64,000 nucleotides of DNA from Isurus oxyrinchus (lineage: Eukaryota). Positions 899-45,555 of the stretch are shown here, one piece after another. The translations under genes and the position numbers were made by a program. The DNA is taken from assembly GCA_026770705.1 (NCBI GenBank), contig JANJGN010000018.1:40610001-40674000 (forward strand). The letters are read 5' to 3'. The notes beneath the pieces are model-generated. The model saw only the letters and a program-made list of their open reading frames with translations. It did not search any database and was not told the DNA's origin. The first letter of the stretch is position 1; each line of letters opens with the position of its first letter.

Positions 899-2410
899 AT
901 CATTGCTGTTGTCAGTCCCTTCAGATGAAGATGATGTCTGCCAGCCTTCAAGATTTGTGTGTTCTCAGGTGACTCCAATCCTGGAGCCACAGGTCTTTGG
1001 GCAGAAAGGACAAGAGTTGCTCCAAGTAAAAAGAGTTTTCTTGAGCCAGGGTTCTGCTCTCTTTCCTTCCACTTTCATTGTTTTTCTGCAGCAGAGTTTA
1101 TGCAGCAGTTCCTGACTGTGTTGCAGCTTATTGGATGAGGCACCACAACACAGCACAATTAACGACAAATTCCTTCCGTGCACCAATGTCAATTTGTTCC
1201 CTTTTCAATAAAGCCTTCAGAGTGTCCTTAAAATGTTTTCTCTGCCTTCCTTGAAATTGGGTGGCATTTAAGTTTGAAAAGAGGATCTGCTTCAGATGCG
1301 GTGTCTGGGTGAGTGGAGCTGATTTCGCATGATTGTGGTTGCAATGCTGGAGGAATTGGCTTTGGTGAGAATGCCAGAGCTTGTTCATCTGTATAAAAAC
1401 AAAAAACTGCAGATGCTAGAAATCCAAAACAGAATTACCTGGAAAAACTCAGCAGGTCTGGCAGCATCGGCGGAGAAGAAAAGAAAAGAGTTTGAGTTCT
1501 GTTGAAGGGTCATGAGGACTCAAAACGTCAACTCTTATCTTCTCCGCCGATGCTGCCAGACCTGCTGAGTTTTTCCAGGTAATTCTGTTTTTGTTTTGTT
1601 CATCTGTATTCCCACTTGACTTTGAGTATTCTGCAGAGACACTGTTGGTGGGGATTCTCCAGTGATCAGAGACTTTGGAAGGTAGCCCAAGTCTCACTGC
1701 CATATAGAAAGTTGGTGACTAAAGCTTTTGCCCTCTTACGAAGATCTCTATTGTCAAAGACCCGCTTGTGCAATTTTTGGAAGGTGCAGCAGCACAGCCA
1801 ATTTGGTGCTGGATCTCCCCTTTGATGGTGACCTTTTGAGAAAGGTAGCTCCCAGGATCTGGGAAGTGTTCAAAACTTCTTAAATTCTCCCCATCAATAA
1901 CAACAGTTGGAGGTGTGGATGCTTGAATGGAGGAGGGCTGGTGGAGGATTTTGGTCTTGCTGATGTTGATTGAGGGATTAACCCTTTTGTATGCAGAGTT
2001 GAAGAGTTTGAGGATGGCCTGAACGTCGTTTGCAGTGTGGGCCACAACTCTGCAGTTGTTGGCATATTTTAAGTCAAGGCTCTCAGCTTGATGAGGTTGA
2101 AAAGCTTCTCATTGAATTGAAACTCATATTATGAGCGCCTGTGAAAATTGGTCATGAATGAGTTCCATGACCAGGCTGAGGTAAATAGTAAAGAGTTGGT
2201 GCAATAATACATCCTTCTTTGATGCCTGTCCATATGTGAAAGGACTTGGTCTCTAATCCATTGCAAAGGATGGTTGCTGTGATGCAATCATACAGAGTGG
2301 ATAGTAACAAATTTTGCTGGTCACCAATCTCTAGAGGACTTTCCAAAATGCTTCACAGGTGATGGAGTCAAAGGCCTTTAACTGATCAAGAAAGGCCATG
2401 TAGAGTTCTA
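899..2410 (-). mobile_element. RTE-clade LINE remnant (RT and 3' end)
   Basis: Degenerate minus-strand peptides GIKEGCIIAPTL, HTANDVQAILKLF...INISKTKILHQ, RQRKHFKDTLK; boundaries approximate. Confidence 0.7.
1395..1595. mobile_element. Fold-back (inverted) PLE pLTR insertion
   Basis: Two inverted pLTR 3' segments. TSD ttgttcatctgtat at 1381-1394 and 1596-1609; interrupts an RTE-like LINE remnant. Confidence 0.88.
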
Positions 2411-4934
2411 GTTATTCAAAATACTTGCGAACTAGATGTAAATGTTAACATTATGAAACCCATATGGTCTGTAAAGGTGGACTGAATATATTTGTGGCTG
2501 AAAAAAATGGCATATTAAACCACTTGATTTATATTAGAAATTTGTGGCAGAACTTGGTACAGCCATCATCAACAGCATGAAAAATAAGGGGCCTTAATAA
2601 CTCCTAACAAAGTAGGGGATTTTCAAATGACACTTTAAAAGTAATGCATTGAAAATATTCCCCTACACTTATTTTCTTTAAGACAGCATTGCTAATTGTC
2701 AGCTTTAAAGTATGTTTTAAACAATAGTCTTCTGCTCATCCCTTACAGTTTGGCAACATTTATATATATATTTTTAAAAAGGCAAAGAAAGCACTGCCTC
2801 TACCCAAGACCTTCCAGTTTGTATCTTGTGATAATGATAACTAGGGATGGTGCTTAACAAATGTCCATACCCAATTTAAGCAACACAGCTGAAAGAATTG
2901 TTCTTGTTGATTCAGTTTAACGTTTTTTGAACGTGTTAGTTTAAATCCTTTTGATGCAGATTTGGTATTATTACTGAGGGATTTGGTTGGGAGATTTACT
3001 GAGTCTTATAGCTGAATTAATACGTTTTGAGATAGATTTAACAATTCAAGACACTTCGGTGATGTTGCTGTTTGAACTGTGTATGATTATTTAGGTCAGA
3101 CATGGTGGTAACTCTTGCCAGTTAGTTTCCAGACATTAGGTCATCAGCATGATTACTGAAACAGAGACTCAAACAAGAAAACAAAGGAATAGGCAACGTA
3201 GCATAAGAAGGACGACAGTATTTTCCCATTCTTGCAGTCATTTTCTCCCCTGGTTTAAGGTACAGTAGTGGCTTGTTCTTTGGCATGGTTTTGTGGGAAT
3301 TGTTGTGGTGCCTGCATGCCATTGTCCTGTAATGGTCCTCAGCAGAGCAAGGGTTAACATGGGACTGGAGAATAGCACCACCCATGGTATGATGTATAGC
3401 GTTACATGGTAATGGACTGAGAGAACAGCTTACAGAGAACACTCTGGAAGCAGCTACCTGCATGATGAACAGCACCATGTATGACAGTAATCTGGGATCT
3501 GTCAATAGTTCAAGACTACCAATAAAGGGTTCATGTTTAAACATACAAGTCTCAAAATCTCATCAATGAGCCACAACAGCTGATCACCCATAGTACAACA
3601 TGGCTGGCAGTGGTAGGAGCGCCTAAAATATATACAGCAGCGGTAATATGAAAGGTGGCAGCATTTTAAGCAATGAATCCAGAACAATTTCCCAAGGTAA
3701 GCAAAACTAAAAACAACTGAAGGCGAACCAGAGAACCTAAGAAGAAAACTTGAAGAAACAATTGAAGAACCTTTGCTACAAACTTAGTAGTTGAGCAATC
3801 CACCGGGGTGAGTGGAAGCCTATTGCAAGACCCATGTGTAATGCAGAGGAAAAATGGAAAAACAACCAGGTCAACTCACAAAGGTGGGTGAGCAGAAATA
3901 CAAAAGTTGCAAGATCCTGAGCGATGCTGATTTAAGACACTTAGTTAGATCGCAAGATGGTGCACAATTCTACAAAAATTGCAAGACCCTGAGTGATGCA
4001 GTGTAAAGAACAGTTTCGAGACAGTGGGCAAAAATGATAAAAAGCTGTATTTACTCTATAGAATAGGTGGCAGTCCCAACGCTCAGCAAATCCATAGAGA
4101 AACTGAAAGACAGCTGCAGTAAAAAAAGGAAAAAGCCTGCAGAGTTTAGGAGAAAGGGAGACCTTTTCAGTTGGGGTCCTGGCTTCTTATATAGAAGAAA
4201 AAATTGCTGCAGTTTAAAATTTTTTTAAAAAGGCCCATGATCAGGGTGATCCCAAAAAAGTGTAAGAGAAACACACAGACAGAACTGATGGCTGCAGACA
4301 GCCCTCAGAGGAAAGAACCCCTTAGAAAAGATGTGCTTCTACCTTGAAAGTTTAGAAGTGTAAAAAAAGTCCCACAATTGCTGGAGAGCCTACCAAAACT
4401 GAAAAGGGCGCAGGAAACTCAAAGCACAGAAAGCTGACAGCCACAGAGTGAAAAAAACGGTTACTTCACTGACAGTCATAAAGCAGTAACGACATTTAAA
4501 GTGATAACTACAGGCCATGGACAGCAAATTAGAAGAGCCAGATGTATTTCTGCTATGGAAAGGGCTAAACCAGACCCAAAAATGGGCGTCTTGGAGAAGA
4601 TAATTTTTAGTGTATAGGAGAAGTACAAGATTAAATAAGGAATCAGAAAAAGTACAATTTGATGAGTTTTTATTCATGTTTGGTTTATTTGCTGGTGAAG
4701 TACTCTATAGCCAACATACAATACCCTTGGTGAGATATTAATATGCTTCAACAGATATTTTAAAGTCCAAGTTATGGAGAAGGTCTAACATACCACACAA
4801 CATTGAGGGCGACGAGACCCCTGAGAGAAGGCAGTTTCTAATAAAGCACCAAGGGCAACAAAACACCCCAGAGAGAGGGCAACTCCCGATAAAGGTGCTG
4901 AGTGCAGCAACAGGTTCAAGAGAAAGGGCAAAAA

Positions 4935-5405: not shown

Positions 5406-6296
5406 GTAGAAAAGGCACTCAAAGAGGTTGTAAGAACAGTCTAGAGAGAACACTCTGGAAGCAGCTACCTGCATGATGAATAGCATCATGCATGACAGTA
5501 ACCTGGGATCTGTAATTAGTTAAAGACTACCAATAAAGGGTTCATGTTTAAACAGACAAGTCTCAAGAACTCATCAAAGAGCCACAACAGTCGATCACCC
5601 ATAGTACAACAGGCATCAACCACTTCCCAAGTGGACATTACACCCGTGTGAGCTTAAACATGGAATAATTTATCTTTGAAGGTGTCACATGGGAACCTGA
5701 TCACAACCTCACCTGACATTCACGCTGTCATCAGGTGTCAGTAAACATCAGAAAGGAAGAGGGGCTGTAGTGCATTTTTACCTTGCCCAGCCCAGAAGTG
5801 AAGATATTTTAGCACATTGCTGTTGCTCTTACTAAGGCAATTTATTTGTTTCCCAGTTTAAAACAGCTTAGCTACCCAGATAATCTCAAAGAACTGGTTA
5901 TGAAATATTAAAGAGACTAGATTGTGTAGTGAACACTATTCCGTAGTGCTTCGAAAGAGAGCAGGACCTGCTACCAACTAGGGCAAAGATAACCATGTAA
6001 AAGAGGTAGCCCCTTATAATATAAATCAGAGTCAATGAGATCTCCTGAAGTAGTTTTAATTGCCTAAACAGGGTAGGAGAGGAGTTTTCCAGATTTTCCT
6101 ATCTAATGGCCTAGGTTTTTATTCTGGCAATGACTTGGCTCCAAGTGGGTAGAGGCTGTCTGTATCGTGATGCAAATCAGATCTATATAGGCCAGAGATA
6201 AAAACAAAGAAAACTGCGGATGCTGGAAATCCAAAACAAAAACAGAATTACCTGGAAAAACTCAGCAGGTCTGGCAGCATCGGCGGAGAAGAAAAG

Positions 6297-6333
6297 AGTT
6301 GACGTTTCGAGTCCTCGACCCTTCGACAGAACT
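6297..6333 (-). ncRNA. Hammerhead motif in 3' pLTR of the left arm (2-nt shorter loop II)
   Basis: Reverse complement reads agttctgtcgaagggtc-gag-gactcgaaacgtcaact. Confidence 0.65.
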
Positions 6334-6714
6334 TGATTTCGAGTCCAAGAAAGAGTTGAAATATAAGTTGGTTTAAGGTGTGTGGTGTGGGGGGGGCGGA
6401 GAGATAGAGAGAGAGAGAGGTGCTTGTGCAGACAAACAAGCAGTGATAGAAGTAGATCATCAAAAGATGTCAGCGACAATGGTACAAAAGAACACAGAGG
6501 TGTTAAAGTTAAAGTTGGTGATATTATCTAAACGAATGTGCTAATTAAGAATGGATGGTAGGGCACTCAAGGTACAGCTCTAGTGGGGGTGGGGGGAGCA
6601 TAAAAGATTTTAAAATATTTTAAAATAATGGAAATAGGTGGGAAAAGAAAAATCTATCAAATTTATAGGGGAAAAAGGGGGAAACAGAAAGGGGGTGGGG
6701 ATGGGGGAGGGAGC

Positions 6715-9471
6715 TCACGACCTAAAGTTGTTGAATTCAATATTCAGACCGGAAGGCTGTAAGGTGCCTAGTCGGAAGATGAGGTGTTGTTCCTCCAGTT
6801 TGCGTTGGGCTTCACTGGAACAATGCAGTAAGCCAAGGACAGACATGTGGGCAAGAGAGCAGGGTGGAGTGTTAAAATGGCAAGCGACAGGGAGGTTTGG
6901 GTCATTCTTGCGGACAGACCGCAGGTGTTCTGCAAAGCGGTCGCCCAGTTTACGTTTGGTCTCTCCAATGTAGAGGAGACCACATTGGGAGCAACAAATG
7001 CAGTAGACTAAGTTGGGGGAAATGCAAGAGAAATGCTGCTTCACTTGAAAGGAGTGTTTGGGCCCTTGGACGGTGAGGAGAGAGGAAGTGAAGGGGCAGG
7101 TGTTACATCTTTTGCGTGGGCATGGGGTGGTGCCATAGGAGGGGGTTGAGGAGTAGGGGGTGATGGAGGAGTGGACCAGGGTGTCCCGGAGGGAGCGATC
7201 CCTACGGAATGCCGATAAGGGGGGTGAAGGGAAGATGTGTTTGGTGGTGGCATCATGCTGGAGTTGGCGGAAATGGCGGAGGATGATCCTTTGAATGCGG
7301 AGGCTGGTGGGGTGATAAGTGAGGACAAGGGGGACCCTATCATGTTTCTGGGAGGGAGGAGAAGGCGTGAGGGTGGATGCGCGGGAGATGGGCCGGACAC
7401 GGTTGATGGCCCTGTCAACGACCGTGGGTGGAAAACCTCGGTTAAGGAAGAAGGAGGACATGTCAGAGGAACCGTTTTTGAAGGTAGCATCATCGGAACA
7501 GATGCGACGAAGGCGAAGGAACTGGGAGAATGGGATGGAGTCCTTACAGGAAGCGGGGTGTGAGGAGCTGTAGTCGAGGTAGCTGTGGGAGTTGGTGGGT
7601 TTGTAATGGATATTGGTGGACAGTCTATCACCAGAGATTGAGACAGAGAGGTCAAGGAAGGGAAGGGAAGTGTCAGAGATGGACCACGTGAAAATGAAGG
7701 AGGGGTGGAGATTGGAAGCAAAATTAATAAATTTTTCCAAGTCCCGACGAGAGCATGAAGTGGCACCGAAGTAATCATCGATGTACCGGAGAAAAAGTTG
7801 TGGAAGGGGGCCGGAGTAGGACTGCAACAAGGAATGTTCCACATACCCCATGAAGAGACAGGCATAGCTGGGGCCCATGCGGGTACCCATAGCCACACCT
7901 TTTATTTGGAGAAAGTGAGAGGAGTTGAAGGAGAAATTGTTCAACGTGAGAACAAGTTCAGCCAGACGGAGGAGAGTAGTGGTGGATGGGGATTGTTCGG
8001 GCCTCTGTTCGAGGAAGAAGCTAAGGGCCCTCAGACCATCCTGGTGGGGGATGGAGGTGTAGAGGGATTGGACGTCCATGGTGAAGAGGAAGCGGTTGGA
8101 GCCAGGGAACTGGAAATTGTTGATGTGACGTAAGGTGTCAGAGGAATCATGGATGTAGGTGGGAAGGGACTGGACAAGGGGAGAGAGAAGGGAGTCAAGA
8201 TAACGAGAAATGAGTTCTGTGGGGCAGGAGCAAGCTGAGATGATTGGTCTACCGGGGCAGTTCTGTTTGTGGATTTTGGGTAGGAGATAGAAGCGGGCCG
8301 TCCGAGGTTGGGCGGCTATCAGGTTGGAAGCTGTGGGAGGGAGATCCCCAGAGGAGATGAGGTCAGTGACAGTCCTGGAAACAATGGCTTGATGTTCAGT
8401 GGTGGGGTCATGGTCCAGGGAGAGGTAGGAGGAAGTGTCTGCGAGTTGACGCTCAGCCTCCGCGAGGTAGAGGTCAGTGCGCCAGACAACAACAGCACCA
8501 CCCTTGTCAGCGGGTTTGATGACAATGTCAGGGTTGGACCTGAGAGAATGGAGTGCAGTAAGTTCAGAGAGAGACAGGTTAGAATGGGTGAGAGGAGCAG
8601 AGAAATTGAGACGACTAATGTCGCGCCGACAGTTCTCAATGAAAAGATCAAGAGAAAGTAAGAATCCAGAGGGAGGGGTCCAGGTGGAGGGAGAATATTG
8701 GAGATGGGTAAAAGGATCGGTTGAACTGGGAGAGGACTCCTGCCCAAAGAAGTGAGCCCGGAGACGAAGACGGCGAAAGAAGAGTTCAGTATCATGCCGA
8801 GCCCGAAATTCATTGAGGTGAGGGCGTAAGGGTATGAAACTAAGTCCTTTGCTGAGCACTGAACGTTCAGCATCAGAGAGGGGAAGGTCAGGGGGTATAG
8901 TGAATACACGGCTGGGGCTGGGATTGGAAGATGAGGTGGGGACGGAGGGACAGGCTGGGGTGGAGGGTCCTAGATGGGTGTTGGTGTCGATGAGTTGTTG
9001 GAGCTTGCATTCCTTAGCAGTTGAGAGAAAGAGAAAAAGTTTCTTGTTGAGGCGTCGGATGAGCCGAAGGATAAAATGAAACTGGGGGCACGCGCAGCTT
9101 TGAAAAAGGGTACGGCGGTGCTGCTGGAGGGAGAGGTCGAGTGTGTTCATATGGCGGCGCATGGCACTGAGTGTGGATTTCAGAATGTGACGGGAACAGC
9201 AGTCTGAGAAACGTTTTATGTCCCGGAGATACCGGTAATCCTGGGTGCGTTCGAAAGATGAGGGGTGGAATTTCAGTTGAAATCCGCATGGGGTAAGTCG
9301 GAGACGGAGACAGTCACTGAGAAAGGAGATATGGCTGTGAAAGCGGGTTTTAGTAAACGCCTTGTCAAACACCAGGAGGGAAATGGAAAGCAAAGAAGGT
9401 GAACAAGGCAACAGAGAGATACGGAAATCTTGTCGCAGAGAGGAACAGAACTTCTTCAAGGAGGTAGGCAT
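6715..9471 (-). CDS. PLE polyprotein: reverse transcriptase + Cys linker + GIY-YIG endonuclease (intact, 918 aa from first ATG)
   Basis: Uninterrupted ORF with IKPADKGG, FYLLPKIHK, FTMDVQSLYT, GVAMGTRMGP, LRYIDD, FLDL, CPRKRCNTC linker, LVYC..C..C..LYIGET...R..EH and C-terminal GLN. The ORF-track start at 9495 is TTG. Confidence 0.93.
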   Translation of the reverse strand: MPTSLKKFCSSLRQDFRISLLPCSPSLLSISLLVFDKAFTKTRFHSHISFLSDCLRLRLTPCGFQLKFHPSSFERTQDYRYLRDIKRFSDCCSRHILKSTLSAMRRHMNTLDLSLQQHRRTLFQSCACPQFHFILRLIRRLNKKLFLFLSTAKECKLQQLIDTNTHLGPSTPACPSVPTSSSNPSPSRVFTIPPDLPLSDAERSVLSKGLSFIPLRPHLNEFRARHDTELFFRRLRLRAHFFGQESSPSSTDPFTHLQYSPSTWTPPSGFLLSLDLFIENCRRDISRLNFSAPLTHSNLSLSELTALHSLRSNPDIVIKPADKGGAVVVWRTDLYLAEAERQLADTSSYLSLDHDPTTEHQAIVSRTVTDLISSGDLPPTASNLIAAQPRTARFYLLPKIHKQNCPGRPIISACSCPTELISRYLDSLLSPLVQSLPTYIHDSSDTLRHINNFQFPGSNRFLFTMDVQSLYTSIPHQDGLRALSFFLEQRPEQSPSTTTLLRLAELVLTLNNFSFNSSHFLQIKGVAMGTRMGPSYACLFMGYVEHSLLQSYSGPLPQLFLRYIDDYFGATSCSRRDLEKFINFASNLHPSFIFTWSISDTSLPFLDLSVSISGDRLSTNIHYKPTNSHSYLDYSSSHPASCKDSIPFSQFLRLRRICSDDATFKNGSSDMSSFFLNRGFPPTVVDRAINRVRPISRASTLTPSPPSQKHDRVPLVLTYHPTSLRIQRIILRHFRQLQHDATTKHIFPSPPLSAFRRDRSLRDTLVHSSITPYSSTPSYGTTPCPRKRCNTCPFTSSLLTVQGPKHSFQVKQHFSCISPNLVYCICCSQCGLLYIGETKRKLGDRFAEHLRSVRKNDPNLPVACHFNTPPCSLAHMSVLGLLHCSSEAQRKLEEQHLIFRLGTLQPSGLNIEFNNFRS

Positions 9472-9572
9472 TTCTTGAAGAGCAGTGGCAGTCAATTAAA
9501 CACAGAGATAAAAACAAAGAACACACACCTTAAACCAACTTATATTTCAACTCTTTCTTGGACTCGAAATCA

Positions 9573-9611
9573 AGTTCTGTCGAAGGGTCATGAGGACTCG
9601 AAATGTCAACT
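9573..9611 (+). ncRNA. Hammerhead motif in 5' pLTR of the right arm (stem III C>T)
   Basis: Same motif but gaaaTgtc instead of gaaaCgtc, which breaks the ACGT palindrome. Confidence 0.6.
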
Positions 9612-9746
9612 CTTTTCTTCTCCGCCGATGCTGCCAGACCTGCTGAGTTTTTCCAGGTAATTCTGTTTTTGTTTTGGATTTCCAGCATCCGCAGTTTTCT
9701 TTGTTTTTATCTCTGTGTTTAATTGACTGCCACTGCTCTTCAAGAA

Positions 9747-12503
9747 ATGCCCACCTCCTTGAAGAAGTTCTGTTCTTTTCTGCGACAAGATTTCCGTATC
9801 TCTCTGTTGCCTTGTTCACCTTCTTTGCTTTCCATTTCCCTCCTGGTGTTTGACAAGGCGTTTACTAAAACCCGCTTTCACAGCCATATCTCCTTTCTCA
9901 GTGACTGTCTCCATCTCCGACTTACCCCACGTGGATTTCAACTGAAATTCCACCCCTCATCTTTCGAACCCACCCAGGATTACCGGTATCTCCGGGACAT
10001 AAAACGTTTCTCAGACTGCTGTTCCCGTCACATTCTGAAATCTACACTCAGTGCCATGCGCCGCCATATGAACACACTCGACCTCTCCCTCCAGCAGCAC
10101 CGCCGTACCCTTTTTCAAAGCTGCGCGTGCCCCCAGTTTCATTTTATCCTTCGGCTCATCTGACGCCTCAACAAGAAACTTTTTCTCTTTCTCTCAACTG
10201 CTAAGGAACGCAAGCTCCAACAACTCATCGACACCAACACCCATCTAGGACCCTCCACCCCAGCCTGTCCCTCCGTCCCCACCCCATCTTCCAATCCCAG
10301 CCCCAGCCGTGTATTCACTATACCCCCTGACCTTCCCCTCTCTGATGCTGAACGTTCAGTGCTCAGCAAAGGACTTAGTTTCATACCCTTACGCCCTCAC
10401 CTCTATGGATTTCGGGCTCGGCATGATACTGAACTCTTCTTTCGCCGTCTTCGTCTCCGGGCTCACTTCTTTGGGCAGGAGTCCTCTCCCAGTTCAACGG
10501 ATCCTTTTACCCATCTCCAATATTCTCCCTCCACCTGGACCCCTCCCTCTGGATTCTTACCTTCTCTTGATCTTTTCATTGAGAACTGTCGGCGCGACAT
10601 TAGTCGTCTCAATTTCTCTGCTCCTCTCACCCATTCTAACCTGTCTCTCTCTGAACTTACTGCACTCCATTCTCTCAGGTCCAACCCTGACATTGTCATC
10701 AAACCCGCTGACAAGGGTGGTGCTGTTGTTGTCTGGCGCACTGACCTCTACCTCGCGGAGGCTGAGTGTCAACTCGCAGACACTTCCTCCTACCTCTCCC
10801 TGGACCATGACCCCACCACTGAACATCAAGCCATTGTTTCCAGGACTGTCACTGACCTCATCTCCTCTGGGGATCTCCCTCCCACAGCTTCCAACCTGAT
10901 AGTCGCCCAACCTCGGACGGCCCACTTCTATCTCCTACCCAAAATCCACAAACAGAACTGCCCCGGTAGACCGATCGTCTCAGCTTGCTCCTGCCCCACA
11001 GAACTCATTTCTCGTTATCTTGACTCCCTTCTCTCTTCCCTTGTCCAGTCCCTTCCCACCTACATCCGTGATTCCTCTGACACCTTACGTCACATCAACA
11101 ATTTCCAGTTCCCTGGCTCCAACCGCTTCCTCTTCACCATGGACGTCCAATCCCTCTACACCTCCATCCCCCACCAGGTTGGTCTGAGGGCCCTTAGCTT
11201 CTTCCTCAAACAGAGGCCCGAACAATCCCCATCCACCACTACTCTCCTCCGTCCGGCTGAACTTGTTCTCACGTTGAACAATTTCTCCTTCAACTCCTCT
11301 CACTTTCTCCAAATAAAAGGTGTGGCTATGGGTACCCGCATGGGCCCCAGCTATGCCTGTCTCTTCATGGGGTATGTGGAACATTCCTTGTTGCAGTCCT
11401 ACTCCGGCCCCCTTCCACAACTTTTTCTCCGGTACATCGATGATTACTTCGGTGCCGCTTCATGCTCTCGTCGGGACTTGGAAAAATTTATTAATTTTGC
11501 TTCCAATCTCCACCCCTCCATCATTTTCACGTGGTCCATCTCTGACACTTCCCTTCCCTTCCTTGACCTCTCTGTCTCAATCTCTGGTGATAGACTGTCC
11601 ACCAATATCCATTACAAACCCACCGACTCCCACAGCTACCTCGACTACAGCTCCTCACACCCCGCTTCCTGTAAGGACTCCATCCCATTCTCCCAGTTCC
11701 TTCGCCTTCGTCGCATCTGTTCCGATGATGCTACCTTCAAAAACGGTTCCTCTGACATGACCTCCTTCTTCCTTAACCGAGGTTTTCCACCCACGGTCGT
11801 TGACAGGGCCCTCAACCGTGTCCGGCCCATCTCCCGTGCATCCGCCCTCGCGCCTTCTCCTCCCTCCCAGAAACATGATAGGGTCCCCCTTGTCCTCACT
11901 TATCACCCCACCAGCCTCCGCATTCAAAGGATCATCCTCCGCCATTTCCGCCAACTCCAGCATGATGCCACCACCAAACACATCTTCCCTTCACCCCCCT
12001 TATCGGCATTCTGTAGGGATCGCTCCGTCCGGGACACCCTGGTCCACTCCTCCATCACCCCCTACTCCTCAACCCCCTCCTATGGCACCACCCCATGCCC
12101 ACGCAAAAGATGTAACACCTGCCCCTTCACTTCCTCTCTCCTCACCGTCCAAGGGCCCAAACACTCCTTTCAAGTGAAGCAGCATTTCACTTGCATTTCC
12201 CCCAACTTAGTCTACTGCATTCGTTGCTCCCAATGTGGTCTCCTCTACATTGGAGAGACCAAACGTAAACTGGGCGACCGCTTTGCAGAACACCTGCGGT
12301 CTGTCCGCAAGAATGACCCAAACCTCCCTGTCGCTTGCCATTTTAACACTCCACCCTGCTCTCTTGCCCACATGTCTGTCCTTGGCTTACTGCATTGTTC
12401 CAGTGAAGACCAACGCAAACTGGAGGAACAACACCTCATCTTCCGACTAGGCACCTTACAGCCTTCCGGTCTGAATATTGAATTCAATAACTTTAGGTCG
12501 TGA
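9747..12503 (+). pseudogene. PLE polyprotein, full length with one premature stop
   Basis: Same length (2757 nt) and colinear with the left copy. TGA at 10161-10163 where the partner has CGA (CpG transition); the ORF-track pieces 9723..10163 and 10359..12503 share one frame. Confidence 0.92.
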
Positions 12504-12880
12504 GCTCCCTCCCCCATCCCCACCCCCTTTCTGTTTCCCCCTTTTTCCCTATAAATTTTATAGATTTTTCTTTTCCCACCTATTTCCATTATTTTAAAAT
12601 ATTTTAAAATCTTTTATGCTCCCTCCACCCCCACTAGAGCTGTACCTTGAGTGCCCTACCATCCATTCTTAATTAGCACATTCGTTTAGATAATATCACC
12701 AACTTTAACTTTAACACCTCTGTGTTCTTTTGTACCATTGTCGCTGACACCTTTTGATGATCTGCTTCTATCACTGCTTGTTTGTCCACACAACCACCTC
12801 TCTCTCTCTCTATCTCTCCGCCCCCCACACACACACCTTAAACCAGCTTATATTTCAACTCTTTCTTGGACTCGAAATCA

Positions 12881-12919
12881 AGTTCTGTCGAAGGGTCATG
12901 AGGACTCGAAACGTCAACT
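12881..12919 (+). ncRNA. Minimal type I hammerhead ribozyme in PLE pLTR (variant core)
   Basis: agtt-CTGTCGA-a-gggtc-atgag-gactc-GAAA-c-GTC-aact: stem I agtt/aact, stem II gggtc/gactc, palindromic ACGT mini stem III, GUC cleavage triplet. Hammerheads are an established feature of PLE pLTRs. Confidence 0.75.
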
Positions 12920-14678
12920 CTTTTCTTCTCCGCCGATGCTGCCAGACCTGCTGAGTTTTTCCAGGTAATTCTGTTTTTGTTCTATATAGGCCAGGCTTGA
13001 CAAATCAATATTTTTTTCATGTTATTTCTGTATATTTTTGATTACCACAAGAGAGATCAAGGATTAAAACAGGGACCTTCCTGGTCTAGTTAAAACTTGC
13101 CTTTATCAATTGAGCCTTTACATTTTGATCCTCTTTTCAAAGAATACTCCCACATGTGCATGAGTGAGAATAGATATGAACAGTATTGTCAATATTGTCT
13201 TTTCTTAGCCATAAAATGTATGTGGCCGGTTTGCAAAATCCTTGTCAATTATCTTGTTTATTTTTATAAAATCTTGCTTCATTAAAAACATAATAACAAA
13301 GTGCATTTACATTTTAGAATTAGACTGTTGAGCCTCATCTCTGTAAATGCTAATTTGTTAATTTGTTGAGCGCTCCATATTAAGTGACTTCTGGAGTCAG
13401 CAAAAACTTCATATATCCCTTTTATTTGTTACTGAGAAATGGAATGTTTCAGAATGAATTAGTAGATGTGCTGCAGCATAACTCTTTATTTAATCAGTTT
13501 ATCTGTGTCTCATTGATATTGCAGTAACATAATGGAAAAAACCTTTTTTGTGAGTGTGGAATAGTGACAATGAAACCCTTTCTCCAAAGAAATCAGTCTT
13601 TTTTTCTATAATGAAATCTGGAAAAAAGTTGTTTTGGTTTCTTTTTCTAGAAGTTCTTGTATCCTGTGGCTTCTGTCAATGCAAGACCACAGAGTGAGAC
13701 TGGAATTTGTTCTGAGCAAAAGAGGTTGAAGCTGGAGCCAACAAAGCACCAGAGGGAGTTGATGTTCAACATTTTCCAGTTTGGTGAAGCAATGCAAATG
13801 GATTTAGGCTATGGCACAACTGGAGACAGAAAATGGTGACTGTGGCAATGACTGCAGCCCAGATAATTCTCTTCCACTAACAGCTGGATTTCGGCGAGCT
13901 GGTGCTGAGGCTGTTAGTAAAGAGCACAGCAGCTTTGCTTTTTCTGTGTATTTTCACCTGGTCTTGTCCTTCACTGCAGCACTAATGTCACATGCTAATA
14001 CTTTAGGTTCATGCTTTAGGTATTGGCTTGTTGGCTTTGGAGAGGCAGGAATTAAAGAACACATAAAATGAAGATGATAGTACACTTACCTTGGAGCTGA
14101 ATCACTCAAAGGACCCAGTCAGCAAAATGTCAAACAAATGAAAGGTGGCAAGTGCTCACATCAGTTCCACCTCCTAGATTATAGCCATGAAAATGACAGC
14201 CAACACCAGGGTTCAAATGCAGAATTGTCGCATATCGCAAATGCACTGGTGCTGAAAATAACACTAGCATGAAATCCCTTGGAAAATGTTAATTAGACTT
14301 TAAAATATAATTAGGTACACATGTTCTGTCAGGGAAGAGAATCTGTAAAATATCACTCTCTCTTGGTCCTGAGCTAATTTAAATAGATGTTCAGGTGGCT
14401 GACACTGGCCATCACACATCACAGAGTAAGACATGAATTCATTCCCCACCATGCCTGCTTTTCATCTCTTTTTAAATTCTATACCACTCCTTGACCAAGA
14501 AGAGGACATAAACCTCTGCTAATGCATTCATCAAGAGAGATATATGGCTTGTGTTTAGATTTACCCTCCTGTGCTACTAATAAGGCACCTAGCCACCACT
14601 GCACAGTATGTTCTTTGTAAGCATGCAAGGATTAGAAGTTTATTCTGTACTTGAAAGGAACAAATGTAGGTTCAATAC

Positions 14679-15086
14679 CTGGACGCTGGACAGTGACAGT
14701 GGTCAGTCCGGACATATTCTCTCCAGCTTTATACCAGATGTTGTTGGGGTTCAGCAGCCATTCCTCCACATGACAATAGTATTTCCCACTATCATCAACA
14801 TCAGCTTTTAGTAAGACTAAAGTGTAATGCCCGCTTAAAGCTTTTTCAGCTTGCAGTCTCTCCTTTCTCTTGTCTCTTCCTAACCAGTCCTTATACTCGA
14901 CCACATAGTCACGGTTTGATATCAGGATGAGTTTATCATCTTTCTCCAATGATTTCTGAACGTACCATTGCACGGAGAATTGCGAGTCTGGTCTTGTTTG
15001 ATTCGTGATGATACAATCTAAATGAATGTTGTCATTTTCTTTTACTACAATGTTCCTTTTTATTTGGTTGACTTTTAATCTACAAT
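14679..15086 (-). CDS. IGSF3: IGSF3 internal exon, Ig V-set domain 6
   Basis: DCRLKV...IHLDCII...QWYVQK...DKLIL...DDSGKYYCHVEEWLLNPNNIWYK...SGLTTVTVQRP. ttttccttacag acceptor, gtattg donor; 408 nt, phase 1-1, in frame with the Ig5 exon. Confidence 0.9.
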
Positions 15087-28820: not shown

Positions 28821-30504
28821 ATAGCTGGGCCCCAGCTATGCCTGTCTCTTTATGGGGTATGTGGAACATTCCTTGTTGCAGTCCTACCCCGGCCCCCTTC
28901 CACAACTTTTTCTCCGGTACATCGATGATTACTTCGGTGCCACTTCATGCTCTCGTCGGGACTTGGAAAAATTTATTAATTTTGCTTCCAATCTCCACCC
29001 CTCCATCATTTTCACGTGGTCCATCTCTGACACTTCCCTTCCCTTCCTTGACCTCTCTGTCTCAATCTCTGGTGATAGACTATCCACCAATATCCATTAC
29101 AAACCCACCGACTCCCACAGCTACCTCGACTACAGCTCCTCACACCCCGCTTCCTGTAAGGACTCCATCCCATTCTCCCAGTTCCTTCGCCTTCGTCGCA
29201 TCTGTTCCGATGATGCTACCTTCAAAAACGGTTCCTCTGACATGTCCTCCTTCTTCCTTAACCCAGGTTTTCCACCCACGGTCGTTGACAGGGCCATCAA
29301 CCGTGTCCGGCCCATCTCCCGTGCATCCGCCCTCACGCCTTCTCCTCCCTCCCAGAAACATGATAGGGTCCCCCTTGTCCTCACTTATCACCCCACCAGC
29401 CTCCGCATTCAAAGGATCATCCTCCACCATTTCCGCCAACTCCAGCATGATGCCACCACCAAACACATCTTCCCTTCACCCCCCTTATCGGCATTCCGTA
29501 GGGATCGCTCCCTCCGGGACACCCTGGTCCACTCCTCCATCACCCCCTACTCCTCAACCCCCTCCTATGGCACCACCCCATGCCCACGCAAAAGATGTAA
29601 CACCTGCCCCTTCACTTCCTCTCTCCTCACCGTCCAAGGGCCCAAACACTCCTTTCAAGTGAAGCAGCATTTCACTTGCATTTCCCCCAACTTAGTCTAC
29701 TGCATTTGTTGCTCCCAAGGTGGTCTCCTCTACATTGGAGAGACCAAACGTAAACTGGGCGACCGCTTTGCAGAACACCTGCGGTCTGTCCGCAAGAATG
29801 ACCCAAACCTCCCTGTCGCTTGCCATTTTAACACTCCACCCTGCTCTCTTGCCCACATGTCTGTCCTTGGCTTACTGCATTGTTCCAGTGAAGCCCAACG
29901 CAAACTGGAGGAACAACACCTCATCTTCCGACTAGGCACCTTACAGCCTTCCGGTCTGAATATTGAATTCAATAACTTTAGGTCGTGAGCTCCCTCCCCC
30001 ATCCCCACCCCCTTTCTGTTTCCCCCCTTTTTTTTTCCCTATAAATTTTATAGATTTTTCTTTTCCCACCTATTTCCATTATTTTTAAATATTTTAAAAT
30101 CTTTTATGCTCCCTCCACGCCCACTAGAGCTGTACCTTGAGTGCCCTACCATCCATTCTTAATTAGCACATTCGTTTAGATAATATCACCAACTTTAACT
30201 TTAACACCTATGTGTTCTTTTGTACCATTGTCCCTGACATCTTTTGATGATCTGCTTCTATCACTGCTTGTTTGTCTACACAATCACCTCTCTCTCTCCC
30301 TATCTCTCCGCCCCACACACACACCTTAAACCAGCTTATATTTCAACTCTTTCTCGGACTCGAAATCAAGTTCTGTCGAAGGGTCATGAGGACTCGAAAC
30401 GTCAACTCTTTTCTTCTCCGCCGATACTGCCAGACCTGCTGAGTTTTTCCAGGTAATTCTGTTTTTGTTTTGGATTTCCAGCATCCGCAGTTTTCTTTGT
30501 TTTT
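28821..30504 (+). mobile_element. 5'-truncated PLE copy (RT C-terminal half, GIY-YIG, 3'UTR, pLTR with tail)
   Basis: ORF 28852-29988 is near-identical to the dimer ORFs. TSD atttctttgcac at 28809-28820 and 30505-30516. Confidence 0.92.
30369..30407 (+). ncRNA. Minimal hammerhead ribozyme in PLE pLTR
   Basis: Same 39-nt motif as 12881-12919. Confidence 0.75.
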
Positions 30505-31429
30505 ATTTCTTTGCACTTGTTGCACTGCTACATCACTGTATCTTACACAGTTTTTTTGTGCAAAACTGATGATAATTTATTAGAAATATATAAAAAAAGC
30601 CTTTCATAATGATTTTCAACTCTACTTCCTAAATGAGATAATTATCCAATAGAAGTGCAAAGCAGTGTACCACAATTTTGGGTCAAAATCCTGGAACTCC
30701 CTTCTTTATAGCACTGTGGGTGTACCTATATGACATGGACTGCAGTGGTTCAAGAAGGCAGCTCACCACCACCTTCTCAAGGGCAACTAGGAATGGGCAA
30801 TAAATGCTGGCCCAGCCAGCAAAGTCCACATCCCGTGAATGAATAATAAAAATAAAAAAATTCTGTTTGGGTAGTGATTTTAAGTTAATCTGTATATGTA
30901 AGGCATTATAAAAGTTGAAATGAAAACTTGCCACCATTTCCTGCTGTTTGCACACCGTTCCTCAGACTCCATTAGTGTTCAGCCTAAGTGCCTTTCTGTA
31001 GAGTCTTTAGGGATCAGAACCAAAATTCTACAGAGTGCTGGAAACACTAATGATTTGTGCTGTCAAGACTGAAACCAGATCTTGCACCCGAGTGAGGGAG
31101 GAATTAAACAAAGTGTTGTGTCCATTGCTCTGTTCAAGATAACTGGGGAAAATGATATCTGTTAATAAGTGTCAAGTAACCTGATCTTAGGTAGAATGAT
31201 GATCAGTATGGAAATTGCAAATTTAATATTAATAGTTTAGAAATAATTTATAAGATATGAAAAAAATATTTTTAATTAAATGCTCAATTCAGATTCTATT
31301 TTAATTTAGAACAGAAAATGTGAGTAATTCATAGCAGGACAGGCTGTAAATGTGGAGAGAACAGGTAAGTTAACATTTTGGGTATGGATCCTTCATCAGA
31401 ACTAAAAGATATGACAAATAAACAAAATT

Positions 31430-31765: not shown

Positions 31766-32016
31766 CATGTCTTGTGTGTGAAGAGTTATCAGAAGCACAT
31801 GATGTTGATGTAACTATGAATATAATGTCACATGCCTAAGTAACGGAGATCTGGAGAGAGAAGTCCAAGCTCATGCAGAGTTCCCAAAATGTACATTGAG
31901 CTGTAAATAAATAATAATGGTTTTAACAAACTAATGTCTTGAGTAGCTCACGTAGGGAAAGTAGACCAACCCCAAAGAACCCCATCTAGACTTCAAACAC
32001 ATGATGAAACAATGCG

Positions 32017-32178
32017 AAACAAAAACGGAATTACCTGGAAAAACTCAGCAGGTCTGGCAGCATCGGCGGAGAAGAAAAGAGTTGACGTTTCGGCACCGAT
32101 GCTGCCAGACCTGCTGAGTTTTTCCAGGTAATTCTGTTTTTGTTTTGGATTTCCAGCATCCGCAGTTTTATTGTTTTT
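32017..32178. mobile_element. Fold-back PLE pLTR insertion
   Basis: Inverted pLTR segments. TSD atgaaacaatg(c/t)g at 32004-32016 and 32179-32191. Confidence 0.87.
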
Positions 32179-32549
32179 ATGAAACAATGTGCTCTGCCTA
32201 AAGGCAGGTCCTTGGCTCATTGCTTGCTGGTGCTTCAACCTAGGCCATTTTTATGGCAGTTTTTGACAGTGGTGGTTTGCCATTGCCTTCCACTCTCAGA
32301 GGCAGAACCTGAGTCTACCTCAGCCAGAATGGGAACTAACCCCACACTGTTGGCGTTAATTTGAACTACACATGAGCCATCTGGCCAAATGAGCTAACTG
32401 GCCCCCTATTAATGCAATAAAAAGGGTCAAAATAAGGGAAAAATTAAAGGATAAAACCCACATAAGCAGGTAAAAAACTTGCAGAGAGTTGAAGTTGAGA
32501 ACCGCAATAATAAAATAGAAGTCATATAAGTATAAGAGAAATTGAAAAA

Positions 32550-33320
32550 AATAGGAAATATATACATGGCACACAACGGTGAGTGTTATGAATAGAAAAG
32601 TTTCGCTGAAAGTGAAAGGAAGAAACTACGAGACAGTTGTGGCCTTGTTATCTAGTGCAGAAACCTGGACAACATCAAGAAGAGAGGAACAACGAATGGA
32701 TACTAATGAGATGTGGATGCTAAGATGGATGTGTAGAGTAACGAGACGGGATAAAATCAGGAGTCAGCACATCAGGGGGTTAGTGATGACAGTGGGAGCA
32801 TTGAAGAAAGTAGCAGGGAAAACGTTGAAATGGTATGTCACCTGTTGCAAGACAGAGGGAAAGGAAATGTGGTGAAACAAAACAGAAAATGCTGGAAAAA
32901 CTCAGCAGATCTGGCAGCATCTGTGGAGAGAGAAACAAAGTTAACGTTTTGAGTCTGTATGACCCTTCTTCAGAAGGGTCTGAAGCTCTGAAGAAAGGTC
33001 ATACGCACTCAAAACATTAACTCTTTCTCTCTCCACAGATGCTGTCAGACCTGCTGAGTTTTTCCAGCAATTTCTGTTTTTGTTACAGATTTCCAGCACC
33101 CGCAGTGTTTTGCTTTTATCTACAGAAATGTGGTGAGGACAGTGACGGAGATGGGACTGCCAGGAAGAAGGAGAAGAGGAAGGCCCATGATGAGATGGAA
33201 AGATGGTGAGAGATTTAAATCATTTGGAAGAGTAATAGGTGACTGATAGGAGGACGTGGAGAAGGGTGATCAATCAGCATTGTGGTGACCCTAAGTAAAG
33301 TAGGAGAAGCCAAAAGAAGA
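32550..33320 (+). mobile_element. RTE-clade LINE 3' remnant
   Basis: KVKGRNYETVV...AETW...EMWMLRWMCRVTRRDKIRSQHIR, then GRRRRGRP..RW.D after the pLTR insertion. Confidence 0.7.
32876..33124. mobile_element. Fold-back PLE pLTR insertion, related older subfamily (CTGAAGA core)
   Basis: Inverted arms ...aaactcagcagatctggcagcatctgtggagagag... / ...ctccacagatgctgtcagacctgctgagtttt... TSD gaaatgtggtga at 32864-32875 and 33125-33136. Confidence 0.85.
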
Positions 33321-38180: not shown

Positions 38181-39442
38181 TTGTCTGCCTTATAGGATGC
38201 TTTGGTGTCTATTTTACATCTGTAAAACGCTGTAGTTTCATCACATTTCTCTGCTTATAAGTGTCTTGGAAGTTCCCCCTGTGATGTTTCTCAACCTCTT
38301 TCTTCTTCTTCTCACTGTGCTTCTGGAATGCTGAACTCATGCATTATTTCTGCTGCCCAGGAAAGATTTTGAGATAAATGCCTTCAAATCAAATAAGACC
38401 CATTCAGCATTGTGAATAAACATATGCTTTGTTAAAGATGATTTGAAAATATTTGAGAACACCTAACGAATGACTCAAGATTTTAAGAGTTAAAGATCCT
38501 CCATTCTGTGTGATTCTGATGAATGGCTCAGAGAAGAACATTCATTACAACTAATGCACAGTGACTCTAATTACTGCTGTGAAAGAACAGTGAAAACATT
38601 AATGGCCACTGGCTCCATTCAATCCTACTTGCAGGAAATGAGCTTTGACGCAAAGCTGACTTTAGAACCTCAAGGGACAGCTACATTTAAGACTGAAGTA
38701 GATGATGGAGATGGGAGCGACTGGAAAGAAAGAAATGAAGTCTAAACTACGGAGCATAGGGAAAGGGAGAGTCTGACTAACAAATAAAAAATAAGTTTTT
38801 ACGTTCTTTGAAGCTTTTAAAGAAGCTTCATTATGGTAGAAAAGGGAGGATATCTGGATGGCATTTACTGATGCAAAACAAACAAACCAGTGCATTCTGT
38901 GTGATGTAGTAATGTTCTGAAACAAATTGTCTGTGTTGGAAAACAAATGCAGGCACCTGCTAAATACTATTCCAATAAACAACGCGTCTTAGTTTTCTGA
39001 TAGCTCAGCATATTTACCTAATAAATAATTGAGCAATTGAAGGCCCACATATAACCTTCCGTTGTGCTGAGCTAGCTGATCTCAGCCAATGTGCAGGTAG
39101 AAGCTCTGTGTATCAGCCAAGGGTCAGTTGATAGCATTCTTGCTTTGGAGTCAAGGGGTTGTGGTTTAACCCCTGGGCTGACACCCTTGTGTGATACTGA
39201 CAAAGTGCTACATTGTCAAAAGGTGCCCTCTTTTGGATGAAATGTTAAACCAAGGCCCCATCTACTCTCTCAGCTGGATATAAAAAATGAGCAGGGAACT
39301 TTTCCCTGGTCTCCTGGCCAATATTTATTCCTCAGTCAATACCACTGTGAAAAATAATCACTGTTGTCTGGGAGAGCTTGCTCTGTAGAAATTGGCTGCT
39401 GCATTTCTTACATTACAACAATGGCCAGACTTCAAAAGTACT

Positions 39443-39573
39443 GAAGAAGAGTTGTACGAACTTGAAACTTTAACTCTGTTCCTCTCCCCACAGATGCTGA
39501 CAGACCTGCTGAGTTTTTATGCATTTTCTGTTTTTATTTCAGATTTCCAGAATCCGCAGTATTTTGCTTTTAT
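39443..39573 (+). mobile_element. Solo PLE pLTR (older subfamily) inserted in a DeuSINE-like element
   Basis: ctgaagaagag...gaaactttaactctg...cagatgctgacagacctgctgag...ccgcagtattttgctttta. TSD cttcaaa(a/c)gtact at 39430-39442 and 39574-39586. Confidence 0.75.
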
Positions 39574-39941
39574 CTTCAAACGTACTTCACTGGCTGTAAT
39601 GCAGGAGATTATGAAAAGTGCTTTCTTTCTTTTGGAGTGGTTTTAATGTACCTGAATTAGGGAGGGGAAAATAACTGGGGTTCTTTTGCCTATCACTATC
39701 CAAACCAAACTGGAGGTGTGTACATTCATACCCACGTTGGGTAAATATGGGACCAGCCTTGGAATCACATTCAACAGCCTACAAATTCTCACTGTCAAGA
39801 TTCGCACACGCATAATAGCCTCTCTGGGCAAGATATCATAGTGCAATCTAGCACCTGGAAACTACTTTAACAAGTAATAGATGCCTTCAAGAGAGAGGAG
39901 AAAAATCTGGCAGAAGGAAACGGTGCATTTTTAAAATGTAT

Positions 39942-45307: not shown

Positions 45308-45555
45308 AAACAGAATTTCCTGGAAAAACTCAGCAGGTCTGGCAGCATCGGCGGAGAAGAAAAGAGTTGACGTTTCGAGTCCTCATGACCCTTCGACAGA
45401 ACTTGAGGAACTTCATCAAGTTCTGTCGAAGGGTCATGAGGACTCGAAACGTCTACTCTTTTCTTCTCCGCCGATGCTGCCAGACCTGCTGAGTTTTTCC
45501 AGGTAATTCTGTTTTTGTTTTGGATTTCCAGCATCCGCAGTTTTTTTTTGTCTTT
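45308..45555. mobile_element. Fold-back PLE pLTR insertion with two inverted hammerhead motifs
   Basis: ~100-bp near-perfect inverted arms around spacer ggaacttca. TSD tgctttttaataa at 45295-45307 and 45556-45568; hammerhead motifs at 45365-45403 (-) and 45419-45457 (+). Confidence 0.9.

What the first reader, a model, noticed from the sequence alone, without database searches (positions are those of the whole stretch)
6182..12994. 6.8-kb head-to-head dimer of two full-length Penelope-like elements within a single TSD
Seen: two complete 2757-nt RT/GIY-YIG coding regions diverge from a junction at ~9520/9521. The right arm has pLTRs at both ends (~9521-9715 and ~12830-12980), while the left arm's 5' end stops ~50 nt upstream of its ATG and abuts the right arm's 5' pLTR. 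One 14-bp duplication (tctatataggccag) bounds the whole. Established: inverted segments next to PLEs are known but are usually short and 5'-truncated. Inference: a single integration event made two full-length cDNAs, giving an unusually complete snapshot of the mechanism.
Basis: partly seen in the sequence, partly recalled or inferred. Interest (0 to 1): 0.8.

Follow-up and report, generated by a model that had tools for sequence, protein, structure and literature searches.

The report
Full-length head-to-head Penelope retroelement pair
Two nearly complete copies of a Penelope-like jumping gene sit head to head inside one 14-base target duplication in a shark genome, a real but expected product of the way these elements are known to insert, unusual only because both copies are full length.

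Summary
The structure is real. The left arm (- strand, 9521/9524 to 6193) and right arm (+ strand, 9521 to 12981) of an RT/GIY-YIG Penelope-like element (PLE) meet head to head. One exact 14-nt duplication bounds them and occurs nowhere else in the window; neither arm has a duplication of its own. One correction: only the left ORF is open. The right one has an in-frame stop at 10161-10163.

The arms differ at 48 of 3286 aligned places, in a neutral pattern. Their 3' ends lie 42 nt apart, which matches the published PLE "tail". Their 5' ends differ (q174 against q1), so this is not a fold-back copy.

Four short head-to-head pairs in the same window show the same plan. In all 5 pairs, one end is tailed and the other tail-less.

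Contigs of a related organism follow the left flank exactly to the end of the duplication and then continue in other, low-copy sequence. That looks like an empty site, but continuity into the right flank was not shown. Reads did not test the central junction.

Single-event, double-primed integration is supported (about 0.8). The architecture is already published (inverted copy, one duplication, one tail, both strands extended in vitro). Earlier notes of this scan report the same plan elsewhere in this genome. This is a new member of a known kind, of moderate interest.

The parts
6182..6195 (.). Left copy of the 14-nt target-site duplication. Its last 3 nt (CAG) could equally be the last 3 nt of the left arm.
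6193..9524 (-). Left arm: one full unit plus 22 nt (period 3310). It reads 9524 to 6193 in sense. The 5' end corresponds to q174 of the pLTR and the 3' end to q195 (q = position in the right arm's 5' pLTR, q1 = 9521).
6193..6234 (-). 'Tail': the 42 nt at the left arm's 3' end that the right arm's 3' end lacks.
   Evidence: (I3 against I4). Literature on the tail:
6193..6384 (-). Left arm 3' pLTR (q1-q195), with a minimal-hammerhead-like motif.
   Evidence: Motif read by eye. Rfam gave no match
6715..9495 (-). Left ORF, open: 926 aa from TTG at 9495, 918 aa from ATG at 9471. RVT_1 lies at aa 410-580 and GIY-YIG at aa 829-863.
9521..9522 (.). Central head-to-head junction. The two 5' ends meet with 1-3 nt of shared letters and no filler.
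   Evidence: Not tested by reads (one search listed no piece across it)
9521..9715 (+). Right arm 5' pLTR (q1-q195), i.e. the 5'-truncated upstream partial copy.
9521..12981 (+). Right arm: one unit plus 153 nt (period 3308). The 5' end is at q1 and the 3' end at q152/153 (tail-less).
9723..12503 (+). Right ORF, colinear with the left one and in the same frame, with one in-frame stop at 10161-10163 (codon 147). RVT_1 and GIY-YIG are present in the 714-aa part.
12829..12981 (+). Right arm 3' pLTR (q1-q153), without the tail.
12981..12994 (.). Right copy of the 14-nt target-site duplication. Its first T could equally be the arm's last base.

Best explanation
This is one insertion event of an endonuclease-bearing Penelope-like element (PLE). 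The element's GIY-YIG nuclease cut both target strands 14 bp apart, so that each 3' end carried the 14 nt. Both 3' ends then primed reverse transcription of element RNA at internal start sites. The top-strand end started at the distal site (left arm, with the 42-nt tail). The bottom-strand end started at the proximal site (right arm, without the tail). Each cDNA ran for slightly more than one unit, 3.33 kb and 3.46 kb. The two cDNA 3' ends were joined at 1-3 nt of microhomology (9521-9524), and each served as template for the other strand. Filling in the two 14-nt stretches produced the duplication. Afterwards both arms decayed neutrally, and the right ORF acquired a stop. Shown here: the anatomy, the single duplication, the absence of per-arm duplications, the different 5' and 3' end points, neutral and equal divergence, and the same plan in four short pairs. 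Inferred: the cut geometry, the order of steps, that two RNA templates were used, and the join by annealing.
For: Only the composite is flanked by a duplication: 14 nt, against 5 nt for each arm alone. The 14-mer is unique to the two edges. The arms are 3286 aligned columns with 48 mismatches and 6 gap columns, and 19 of the 48 mismatches are CpG transitions. In the ORF, 7 differences are synonymous and 32 non-synonymous, a ratio of 1.48, so the differences arose without selection, as expected after insertion. Private changes are 12 in the left arm, 10 in the right arm and 15 in a third copy, over 1637 shared columns. The 3' ends lie at q195 and q152/153, which matches the two reverse-transcription start sites, separated by the tail, reported in vitro. 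The same paper reports that the PLE protein cuts and extends both strands. In this window 5 of 8 insertions of the family are outward-facing pairs with one 11-14-nt duplication each, and in 5 of 5 pairs one arm ends in the short class (q150-156) and the other in the long class (q187-195). Contigs of organism B from two runs (X15 record 9, 3019 nt; X9 record 24, 1416 nt) match 5650-6195, stop exactly at 6195, and carry 2313 and 881 further letters that do not lie on the arm. The organism A contig instead enters the arm with 0 differences and ends 18-21 nt inside the repeat.
Against: No listed contig piece crossed the central junction, so it rests on the assembly alone. The third organism B run laid (X5) gave no listed piece at the site. 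Equal private counts fit any two copies from one burst, not only a joint origin. Two places (6996, 7761) group the left arm with the third copy against the right arm. Both are CpG transitions, so parallel change is likely, but different source RNAs are not excluded. Only 32 of the 91 variant places on the arm were visible to me (one search kept 59 rows back). The in vitro study saw no difference in start site between the two strands, so the strict one-tail rule seen here is not explained.
Confidence: 0.8

Rival explanations
1. Two separate insertions: the second element landed exactly at the 5' edge of the first, in the opposite orientation.
For: PLE ribonucleoproteins are reported to nick their own pLTR as well as other AT-rich DNA, so nested hits are plausible in principle. 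The family is very abundant, with 8 insertions in 64 kb.
Against: Neither arm has its own flanking repeat: the longest shared word is 5 nt, at chance level. The 14-nt duplication pairs the 3' flank of one arm with the 3' flank of the other. The same plan recurs in 4 other pairs in the window. Private changes are equal, 12 against 10.
Confidence: 0.04
2. Assembly artefact: a false inverted duplication made from a single copy, for example from a chimeric fold-back read.
For: No listed contig piece tested the central junction. Craig 2021 notes that these inverted structures often cause assembly problems.
Against: The arms differ at 48 places plus 6 gap columns. One ORF is open and the other is stopped. 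The 5' ends (q174 against q1) and the 3' ends (q195 against q153) differ. The duplication is direct, not inverted. The left outer junction is present without differences in a 689-nt contig of organism A, although that sample may be the one the assembly came from.
Confidence: 0.03
3. A single event with one primer only: the first cDNA snapped back on itself, or the enzyme switched template to the nascent cDNA. The second arm would then be a DNA-templated copy of the first. Arkhipova 2013 discussed self-priming for PLE inverted repeats.
For: The self-priming proposal is. Two of the 5 pairs here have nearly the same turn point in both arms (D: q50/q49; C: q55/q52). This route would also explain why one arm stops short of the tail.
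Against: In the focal pair the junction is not symmetric: q174 meets q1, so the right arm carries 173 nt at its 5' end that the left arm lacks there. Pairs A and B are asymmetric in the same way (q88-91 against q53; q79 against q105). Single, unpaired copies E and F also begin at q52-53. A shared RNA 5' end therefore explains the symmetric pairs. Of the 15 joints listed, 13 join arms whose 5' ends differ by more than 5 nt. These joints have short sides of 19-26 letters, and 2399 more were not shown.
Confidence: 0.08

Closest known systems
Canonical EN+ Penelope-like element insertions (Evgen'ev and Arkhipova; Craig et al. 2021, PMC8557442; Arkhipova et al. 2013, PMC3846280)
   Same: A single ORF encodes RT plus a C-terminal GIY-YIG nuclease. 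A pseudo-LTR arises from a partial upstream copy. An inverted copy sits next to the upstream pLTR, and one TSD surrounds the whole. A 30-40-bp tail is present at only one end (passages read).
   Different: In the published typical form the inverted copy is 5'-truncated, often to a pLTR only. Here it is a whole unit with an open ORF.
Drosophila virilis Penelope 'form C' (Schostak et al. 2008, PMC2377424)
   Same: [quoted passage not shown] This form is frequent in D. virilis and in transformed D. melanogaster (passages read).
   Different: That is an insect element. The passages I read do not say whether an inverted arm ever reaches full length with an ORF.
In vitro PLE integration, Anolis Poseidon PAc (Frangieh et al. 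2024, PMC11167929)
   Same: [quoted passage not shown] Reverse transcription starts at two adjacent internal sites, and the spacing between them equals the genomic tail (main text read). The two 3' end classes here lie about 40 nt apart.
   Different: In PAc the start sites lie 111-118 nt inside the ORF. Here they lie upstream of the ATG (q153 and q195 against the ATG at q227). In vitro, start-site use did not differ between strands. Here every pair has one arm of each class.
L1 twin priming (inversion with 5' truncation).
   Same: Both 3' ends of a staggered break prime reverse transcription, and the two cDNAs join by microhomology inside one TSD.
   Different: In L1 the two segments come from different parts of one RNA and do not overlap. 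Here each arm holds a whole unit, so either two RNAs or one multi-unit RNA is needed.

Membership tests
EN+ Penelope-like elements (C-terminal GIY-YIG) | Single ORF with a reverse transcriptase domain | tested here: met
   RVT_1 scores E 2.8e-08 and 34.1 bits against a cutoff of 29.6, at aa 410-580 of the left ORF. It is also present in the right arm's 714-aa part. There are 1122 relatives at E<=1e-10 among 8000 candidates scored, mostly about 900 aa and carrying RVT_1.
EN+ Penelope-like elements (C-terminal GIY-YIG) | GIY-YIG endonuclease C-terminal to the RT | tested here: inconclusive
   PF01541 matches at aa 829-863 with E 0.0013 and 19.5 bits, below the curated cutoff of 22.6; the right arm scores 20.2 bits. 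Part of the relatives carry PF01541 in precomputed Pfam. The position and the motifs seen in the translation fit, but the curated threshold is not reached.
EN+ Penelope-like elements (C-terminal GIY-YIG) | Pseudo-LTR formed by a partial tandem copy | tested here: met
   9521-9673 matches 12829-12981 at 99% with a spacing of 3308 nt. The left arm has a 22-nt terminal redundancy with a spacing of 3310 nt.
EN+ Penelope-like elements (C-terminal GIY-YIG) | Hammerhead ribozyme motif in the pLTR | tested here: inconclusive
   Rfam gave no hammerhead match: 0 matches at E<=1 over 5800-13400, 0 at E<=10 over 12820-12990, and only hairpin-type chance matches in an older copy. By eye there is a min-HHR-like layout: a 4-bp helix I, a bulged base before a 5-bp helix II, and GAAAC followed by GUC, as described for PLE min-HHRs. 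The core, however, reads CUGUCGA instead of CUGANGA. Cleavage was not tested.
EN+ Penelope-like elements (C-terminal GIY-YIG) | Tail of 30-40 bp at only one end of the insertion | tested here: met
   The left arm ends at q195 and the right arm at q152/153, a difference of 42 nt. The same holds in 5 of 5 pairs in the window.
EN+ Penelope-like elements (C-terminal GIY-YIG) | Short target-site duplication around the whole unit, inverted copy included | tested here: met
   An exact 14 nt, unique to the two edges.
EN+ Penelope-like elements (C-terminal GIY-YIG) | Clade assignment (Neptune, Penelope/Poseidon or Nematis) | not tested
No named reference proteins were available. The nearest named hits are uncharacterized Chiloscyllium punctatum proteins at 64-68% identity over 60-65% of the query.
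Fold-back (snap-back) palindrome | Both arms start at the same point, symmetric about the turn | tested here: not met
   The arm 5' ends are at q174 and q1.
L1-type twin priming on one single-unit RNA | The inverted and direct segments are non-overlapping parts of one template | tested here: not met
   The arms overlap over 3286 aligned columns.

The most novel reading that the evidence does not exclude
Both arms were copied from one multi-unit (tandem) transcript held by one dimeric ribonucleoprotein. The right-arm cDNA started at the proximal site of one pLTR. The left-arm cDNA started one unit downstream at the distal site, ran exactly one unit, and stopped at q174. That is 21 nt short of where the other enzyme had started (q153). 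On such an RNA the two arms are adjacent, non-overlapping stretches. On this reading the odd 5' end of the left arm marks a collision of the two priming complexes, and the rule of one tailed and one tail-less end (5 of 5 pairs here) reflects two protomers that each use a different start site.
Probability: 0.1. Interest if true: 0.6.

Novelty: new member of a known kind. Interest (0 to 1): 0.35.

Why it matters
How PLEs integrate is still only partly understood. In vitro work shows that both target strands are cut and extended and that reverse transcription starts at two internal sites. It does not follow the reaction to a finished insertion. This locus is a finished product in which both cDNAs reached full length. 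It shows that the inverted partner is an independent, processive cDNA and not a short by-product or a snap-back copy. It also shows that the two ends use different start sites, and that the two cDNAs join with almost no homology. Because a related organism probably has the empty site, the event can be dated and the target reconstructed. This is useful as a worked example and as a constraint on models. It is not a new kind of element or mechanism.

Tried and rejected
Hammerhead by Rfam: three searches gave no hammerhead match, so I only describe the motif by eye.

RNA folding of 9565-9740: the fold is no more stable than shuffles (z = +1.86; 197 of 200 shuffles fold at least as well). I therefore make no claim about RNA structure at the start sites.

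Same source RNA for both arms: of the 32 variant places on the arm that one search listed (59 more rows were withheld), 13 are left-arm-only changes and 19 are shared by both arms. Of the 6 shared places that the third copy also covers, 5 are shared by that copy too, so they are subfamily marks. Only 1 (6497) is specific to the two arms. Two places group the left arm with the third copy. The question stays open.

Flank paralogues for a second empty site: only a 179-nt match of 5433-5611 to 3422-3600, which is far from the junction and of no use.

Local alignment of arm ends ran on into T-rich flanks. I replaced it with anchored, ungapped reading.

Depth was not used as copy number, as the tool advises.

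Literature: searches. In the passages I read I found no explicit report of a pair with both arms full length. The supplementary figures of PMC11167929 (Fig. S1, S2) and the supplementary files of PMC8557442 may show such copies. [quoted passage not shown]
Full report
ANATOMY. In this report q is the position in the right arm's 5' pLTR, with q1 = 9521. Between 6182 and 12994 lie two copies of one retroelement, head to head. The right arm runs on the + strand from 9521 to 12981 (3461 nt). Its first 153 nt are repeated at its end (9521-9673 matches 12829-12981 at 99%, spacing 3308), so it is one unit plus a partial upstream copy, that is, a pseudo-LTR. The full pLTR spans 9521-9715 (q1-q195), as shown by its match to 6193-6384 on the other strand. 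The left arm runs on the - strand from 9521/9524 to 6193 (about 3330 nt). It is one unit plus 22 nt (6193-6214 repeats 9503-9524, spacing 3310). In q terms the left arm starts at q174 and ends at q195, and the right arm starts at q1 and ends at q152/153. The left arm therefore carries 42 nt at its 3' end (6193-6234) that the right arm lacks. The two 5' ends meet at 9521/9522. One to three letters could belong to either arm, and there is no filler.

THE DUPLICATION. The 14-mer at 6182-6195 recurs exactly at 12981-12994. With one mismatch allowed it is found only at these 2 places in the 64 kb. The expected number is 0.03, and 0 of 100 shuffles reached 2. I compared 36-nt windows at the edges. 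The composite shares 14 nt, while the left arm alone and the right arm alone each share only 5 nt with their far edge. In 2000 random pairs, 5 nt was the commonest value (779 pairs). Neither arm has its own duplication; only the pair does.

PROTEIN. The left ORF (9495-6715) is open: 926 aa from the first TTG and 918 aa from the ATG at 9471. It has RVT_1 above Pfam's cutoff (E 2.8e-08, aa 410-580). A GIY-YIG match lies at aa 829-863, just below the cutoff (19.5 against 22.6 bits). The translation shows the DKG stretch that Craig 2021 names as diagnostic of PLEs. The word search found 1122 relatives at E<=1e-10 among the 8000 candidates scored. Most are about 900 aa and carry RVT_1, and some carry PF01541. 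The nearest named ones are uncharacterized proteins of the bamboo shark Chiloscyllium punctatum, at 64-68% identity over 60-65% of the query. The right ORF (9723-12503) is colinear and in the same frame, but it has a stop at codon 147 (10161-10163). Its 714-aa part keeps both domains.

THE ARMS COMPARED. Over 3286 aligned columns there are 48 mismatches and 6 gap columns. Of the mismatches, 35 are transitions and 19 of those sit at CpG. In the ORF, 7 differences are synonymous and 32 non-synonymous (ratio 1.48), so there is no sign of selection between the arms. A third, 5'-truncated copy (28826-30513) shares 1637 columns with both arms. Over these columns 12 changes are private to the left arm, 10 to the right arm and 15 to the third copy. 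The arms have thus decayed equally and neutrally. That fits a joint origin, but it would also fit two copies from one burst. I tried to tell whether both came from one source RNA by using the letters that most contigs read. Among the 32 visible places, 13 are left-arm-only changes and 19 are shared by both arms. Of the 6 shared places also covered by the third copy, 5 are shared by it too. Only one place is specific to the two arms, and two CpG places group the left arm with the third copy. This test is inconclusive.

THE SAME PLAN ELSEWHERE IN THE WINDOW. blastn of the right arm against the window and direct reading show 8 insertions of this family or older relatives. Five are outward-facing pairs: the focal one plus A (1393-1598), B (32011-32180), C (32875-33121) and D (45303-45548). 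Three are single: E (53230-53338), F (39436-39575) and G (28826-30513). Each has its own flanking duplication of about 10-14 nt; those of E and F are imperfect by one letter. The 3' ends fall into two classes. The short class (q150-156) holds focal right, A+, B-, C-, D- and E. The long class (q187-195) holds focal left, A-, B+, C+, D+, F and G. In 5 of 5 pairs one arm is short and the other long. If each arm chose independently, that outcome would have a probability of at most 0.03. The arm 5' ends are often unequal: A has q88-91 and q53, B has q79 and q105, and the focal pair has q174 and q1. They are nearly equal in C (q55, q52) and D (q50, q49). The single copies E and F also begin at q52-53, so q49-56 looks like a common template 5' end.

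READS. The run search with 5650-6450 found an organism A (4 runs of one sample, holding 0.88-0.92 of the sampled words, probably the source of the assembly). It also found an organism B (16 runs, 9 samples, 7 studies, 0.29-0.51 of the words). I laid contigs of X1 (A) and of X5, X9 and X15 (B) on 5650-9800. In A, a 689-nt contig covers 5650-6213 with 0 differences and ends 18-21 nt inside the arm, as expected where a high-copy repeat begins. In B, two contigs from different studies (X15 record 9, 3019 nt; X9 record 24, 1416 nt) match the flank with 8 substitutions and 2 indels. Both stop matching exactly at 6195, the last base of the duplication, and carry 2313 and 881 further letters that lie nowhere on the arm. 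Contigs of this type break at the repeat in A, so such a long continuation means low-copy sequence follows in B. This is what an empty site predicts, and it also shows that the whole 14-mer, including its final CAG, was target sequence. I could not show that the continuation is the right flank. The third B run (X5) had thin cover there and gave no listed piece. No listed piece crossed 9521, so reads did not test the central junction. The same call lists 15 joints (2399 more not shown) that link a - strand pLTR directly to a + strand pLTR in all four runs. This fits many short head-to-head pairs in both organisms. These joints have sides of only 19-26 letters, so I use them as weak support only. 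The flank divergence between A and B (8 of 546) is about the same as the divergence between the arms. With CpG transitions excluded, the arms differ at 29 of 3286 places, which fits an insertion after the two organisms split.

WHAT IS KNOWN. [quoted passage not shown] Arkhipova 2013 describes a rotifer copy with two direct pLTRs and one inverted pLTR, one 9-bp TSD and a 31-bp tail on one inverted pLTR. That paper calls head-to-head the most frequent arrangement and notes long tandem/inverted structures that broke assemblies. [quoted passage not shown] Frangieh 2024 shows in vitro that a PLE protein cleaves and extends both strands. It also shows that reverse transcription starts at two adjacent internal sites, and that the spacing between them is the tail. 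Every feature of this locus is therefore on record, except that the inverted arm is a whole unit with an open ORF. I found no explicit report of that in the passages I read. Supplements were closed. Earlier notes of this scan, unchecked, report the same plan on other pieces of this genome, including arms of about 1.45 kb and the one-short-end rule. They also call the genome a shark.

MECHANISM AND RIVALS. The best reading is one event with both target 3' ends priming reverse transcription, two independent cDNAs of full length, and a join at microhomology (confidence 0.8). Sequential insertions are disfavoured by the duplication pattern (0.04). An assembly artefact is disfavoured by the 48 differences, the unequal ends and the direct duplication (0.03). 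A one-primer snap-back is disfavoured by the asymmetric junction here and in pairs A and B (0.08). One bolder variant cannot be excluded. On a multi-unit RNA the two arms would be adjacent, non-overlapping stretches separated by only 20 nt (q154-q173), so one RNA may have served both primers, with the left cDNA stopping where the right one began. It rests on one locus, and the short pairs cannot be explained this way, so I give it 0.1.

VERDICT. The single-event reading is supported. It is a well-preserved, datable, full-length example of a published insertion mode: a new member of a known kind, with interest 0.35.

Noticed in passing
window 1393-1598, 32011-32180, 32875-33121, 45303-45548: Four short (170-250 nt) outward-facing pairs consist only of pLTR ends of the same family or an older relative. 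Each has its own 11-14-nt target duplication, and each has one short (q150-156) and one long (q187-195) 3' end.
   Followed up: yes
window 1495, 32983, 32975, 39436, 45406, 45415, 53230 (arm 5' ends): Seven of the 10 short arms (8 arms in pairs A-D plus single copies E and F) begin at q49-56. That is about 25-30 nt downstream of a TATA-like stretch of the pLTR (9541-9547 in the focal copy). They may be full-length copies of transcripts that start in the pLTR. A pLTR start site is published for Penelope.
   Followed up: partly
window 9575-9612 and 12866-12918; older copies 32950-33040, 39436-39480: The pLTR has a minimal-hammerhead-like layout. Its core reads CUGUCGA in the young copies, while two older copies read CUGAAGA, which fits the canonical CUGANGA. 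Rfam finds no hammerhead in either.
   Followed up: partly
window 1484: The - strand arm of pair A begins exactly at the base after the GUC of the hammerhead-like motif, which is the predicted cleavage site (q88).
   Followed up: no
window 14632-14973 (- strand): An ORF of 113 aa matches the immunoglobulin V-set domain (E 8.7e-06, 26.3 bits against a cutoff of 26). It is probably an exon of an Ig-superfamily gene and lies 1.6 kb from the insertion.
   Followed up: partly
window 5798 and about 5897: In the left flank, organism B contigs carry a 3-nt and an approximately 30-nt insertion relative to the window, together with 8 substitutions over 5650-6195.
   Followed up: no
window 28826-30513: A 5'-truncated single copy of the same subfamily (98% identical to the right arm) has a full tailed 3' end, a 12-nt duplication and 4 extra letters at its 5' junction.
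   Followed up: partly
window 5433-5611 and 3422-3600: A 179-nt direct repeat (91%) lies left of the insertion.
   Followed up: no
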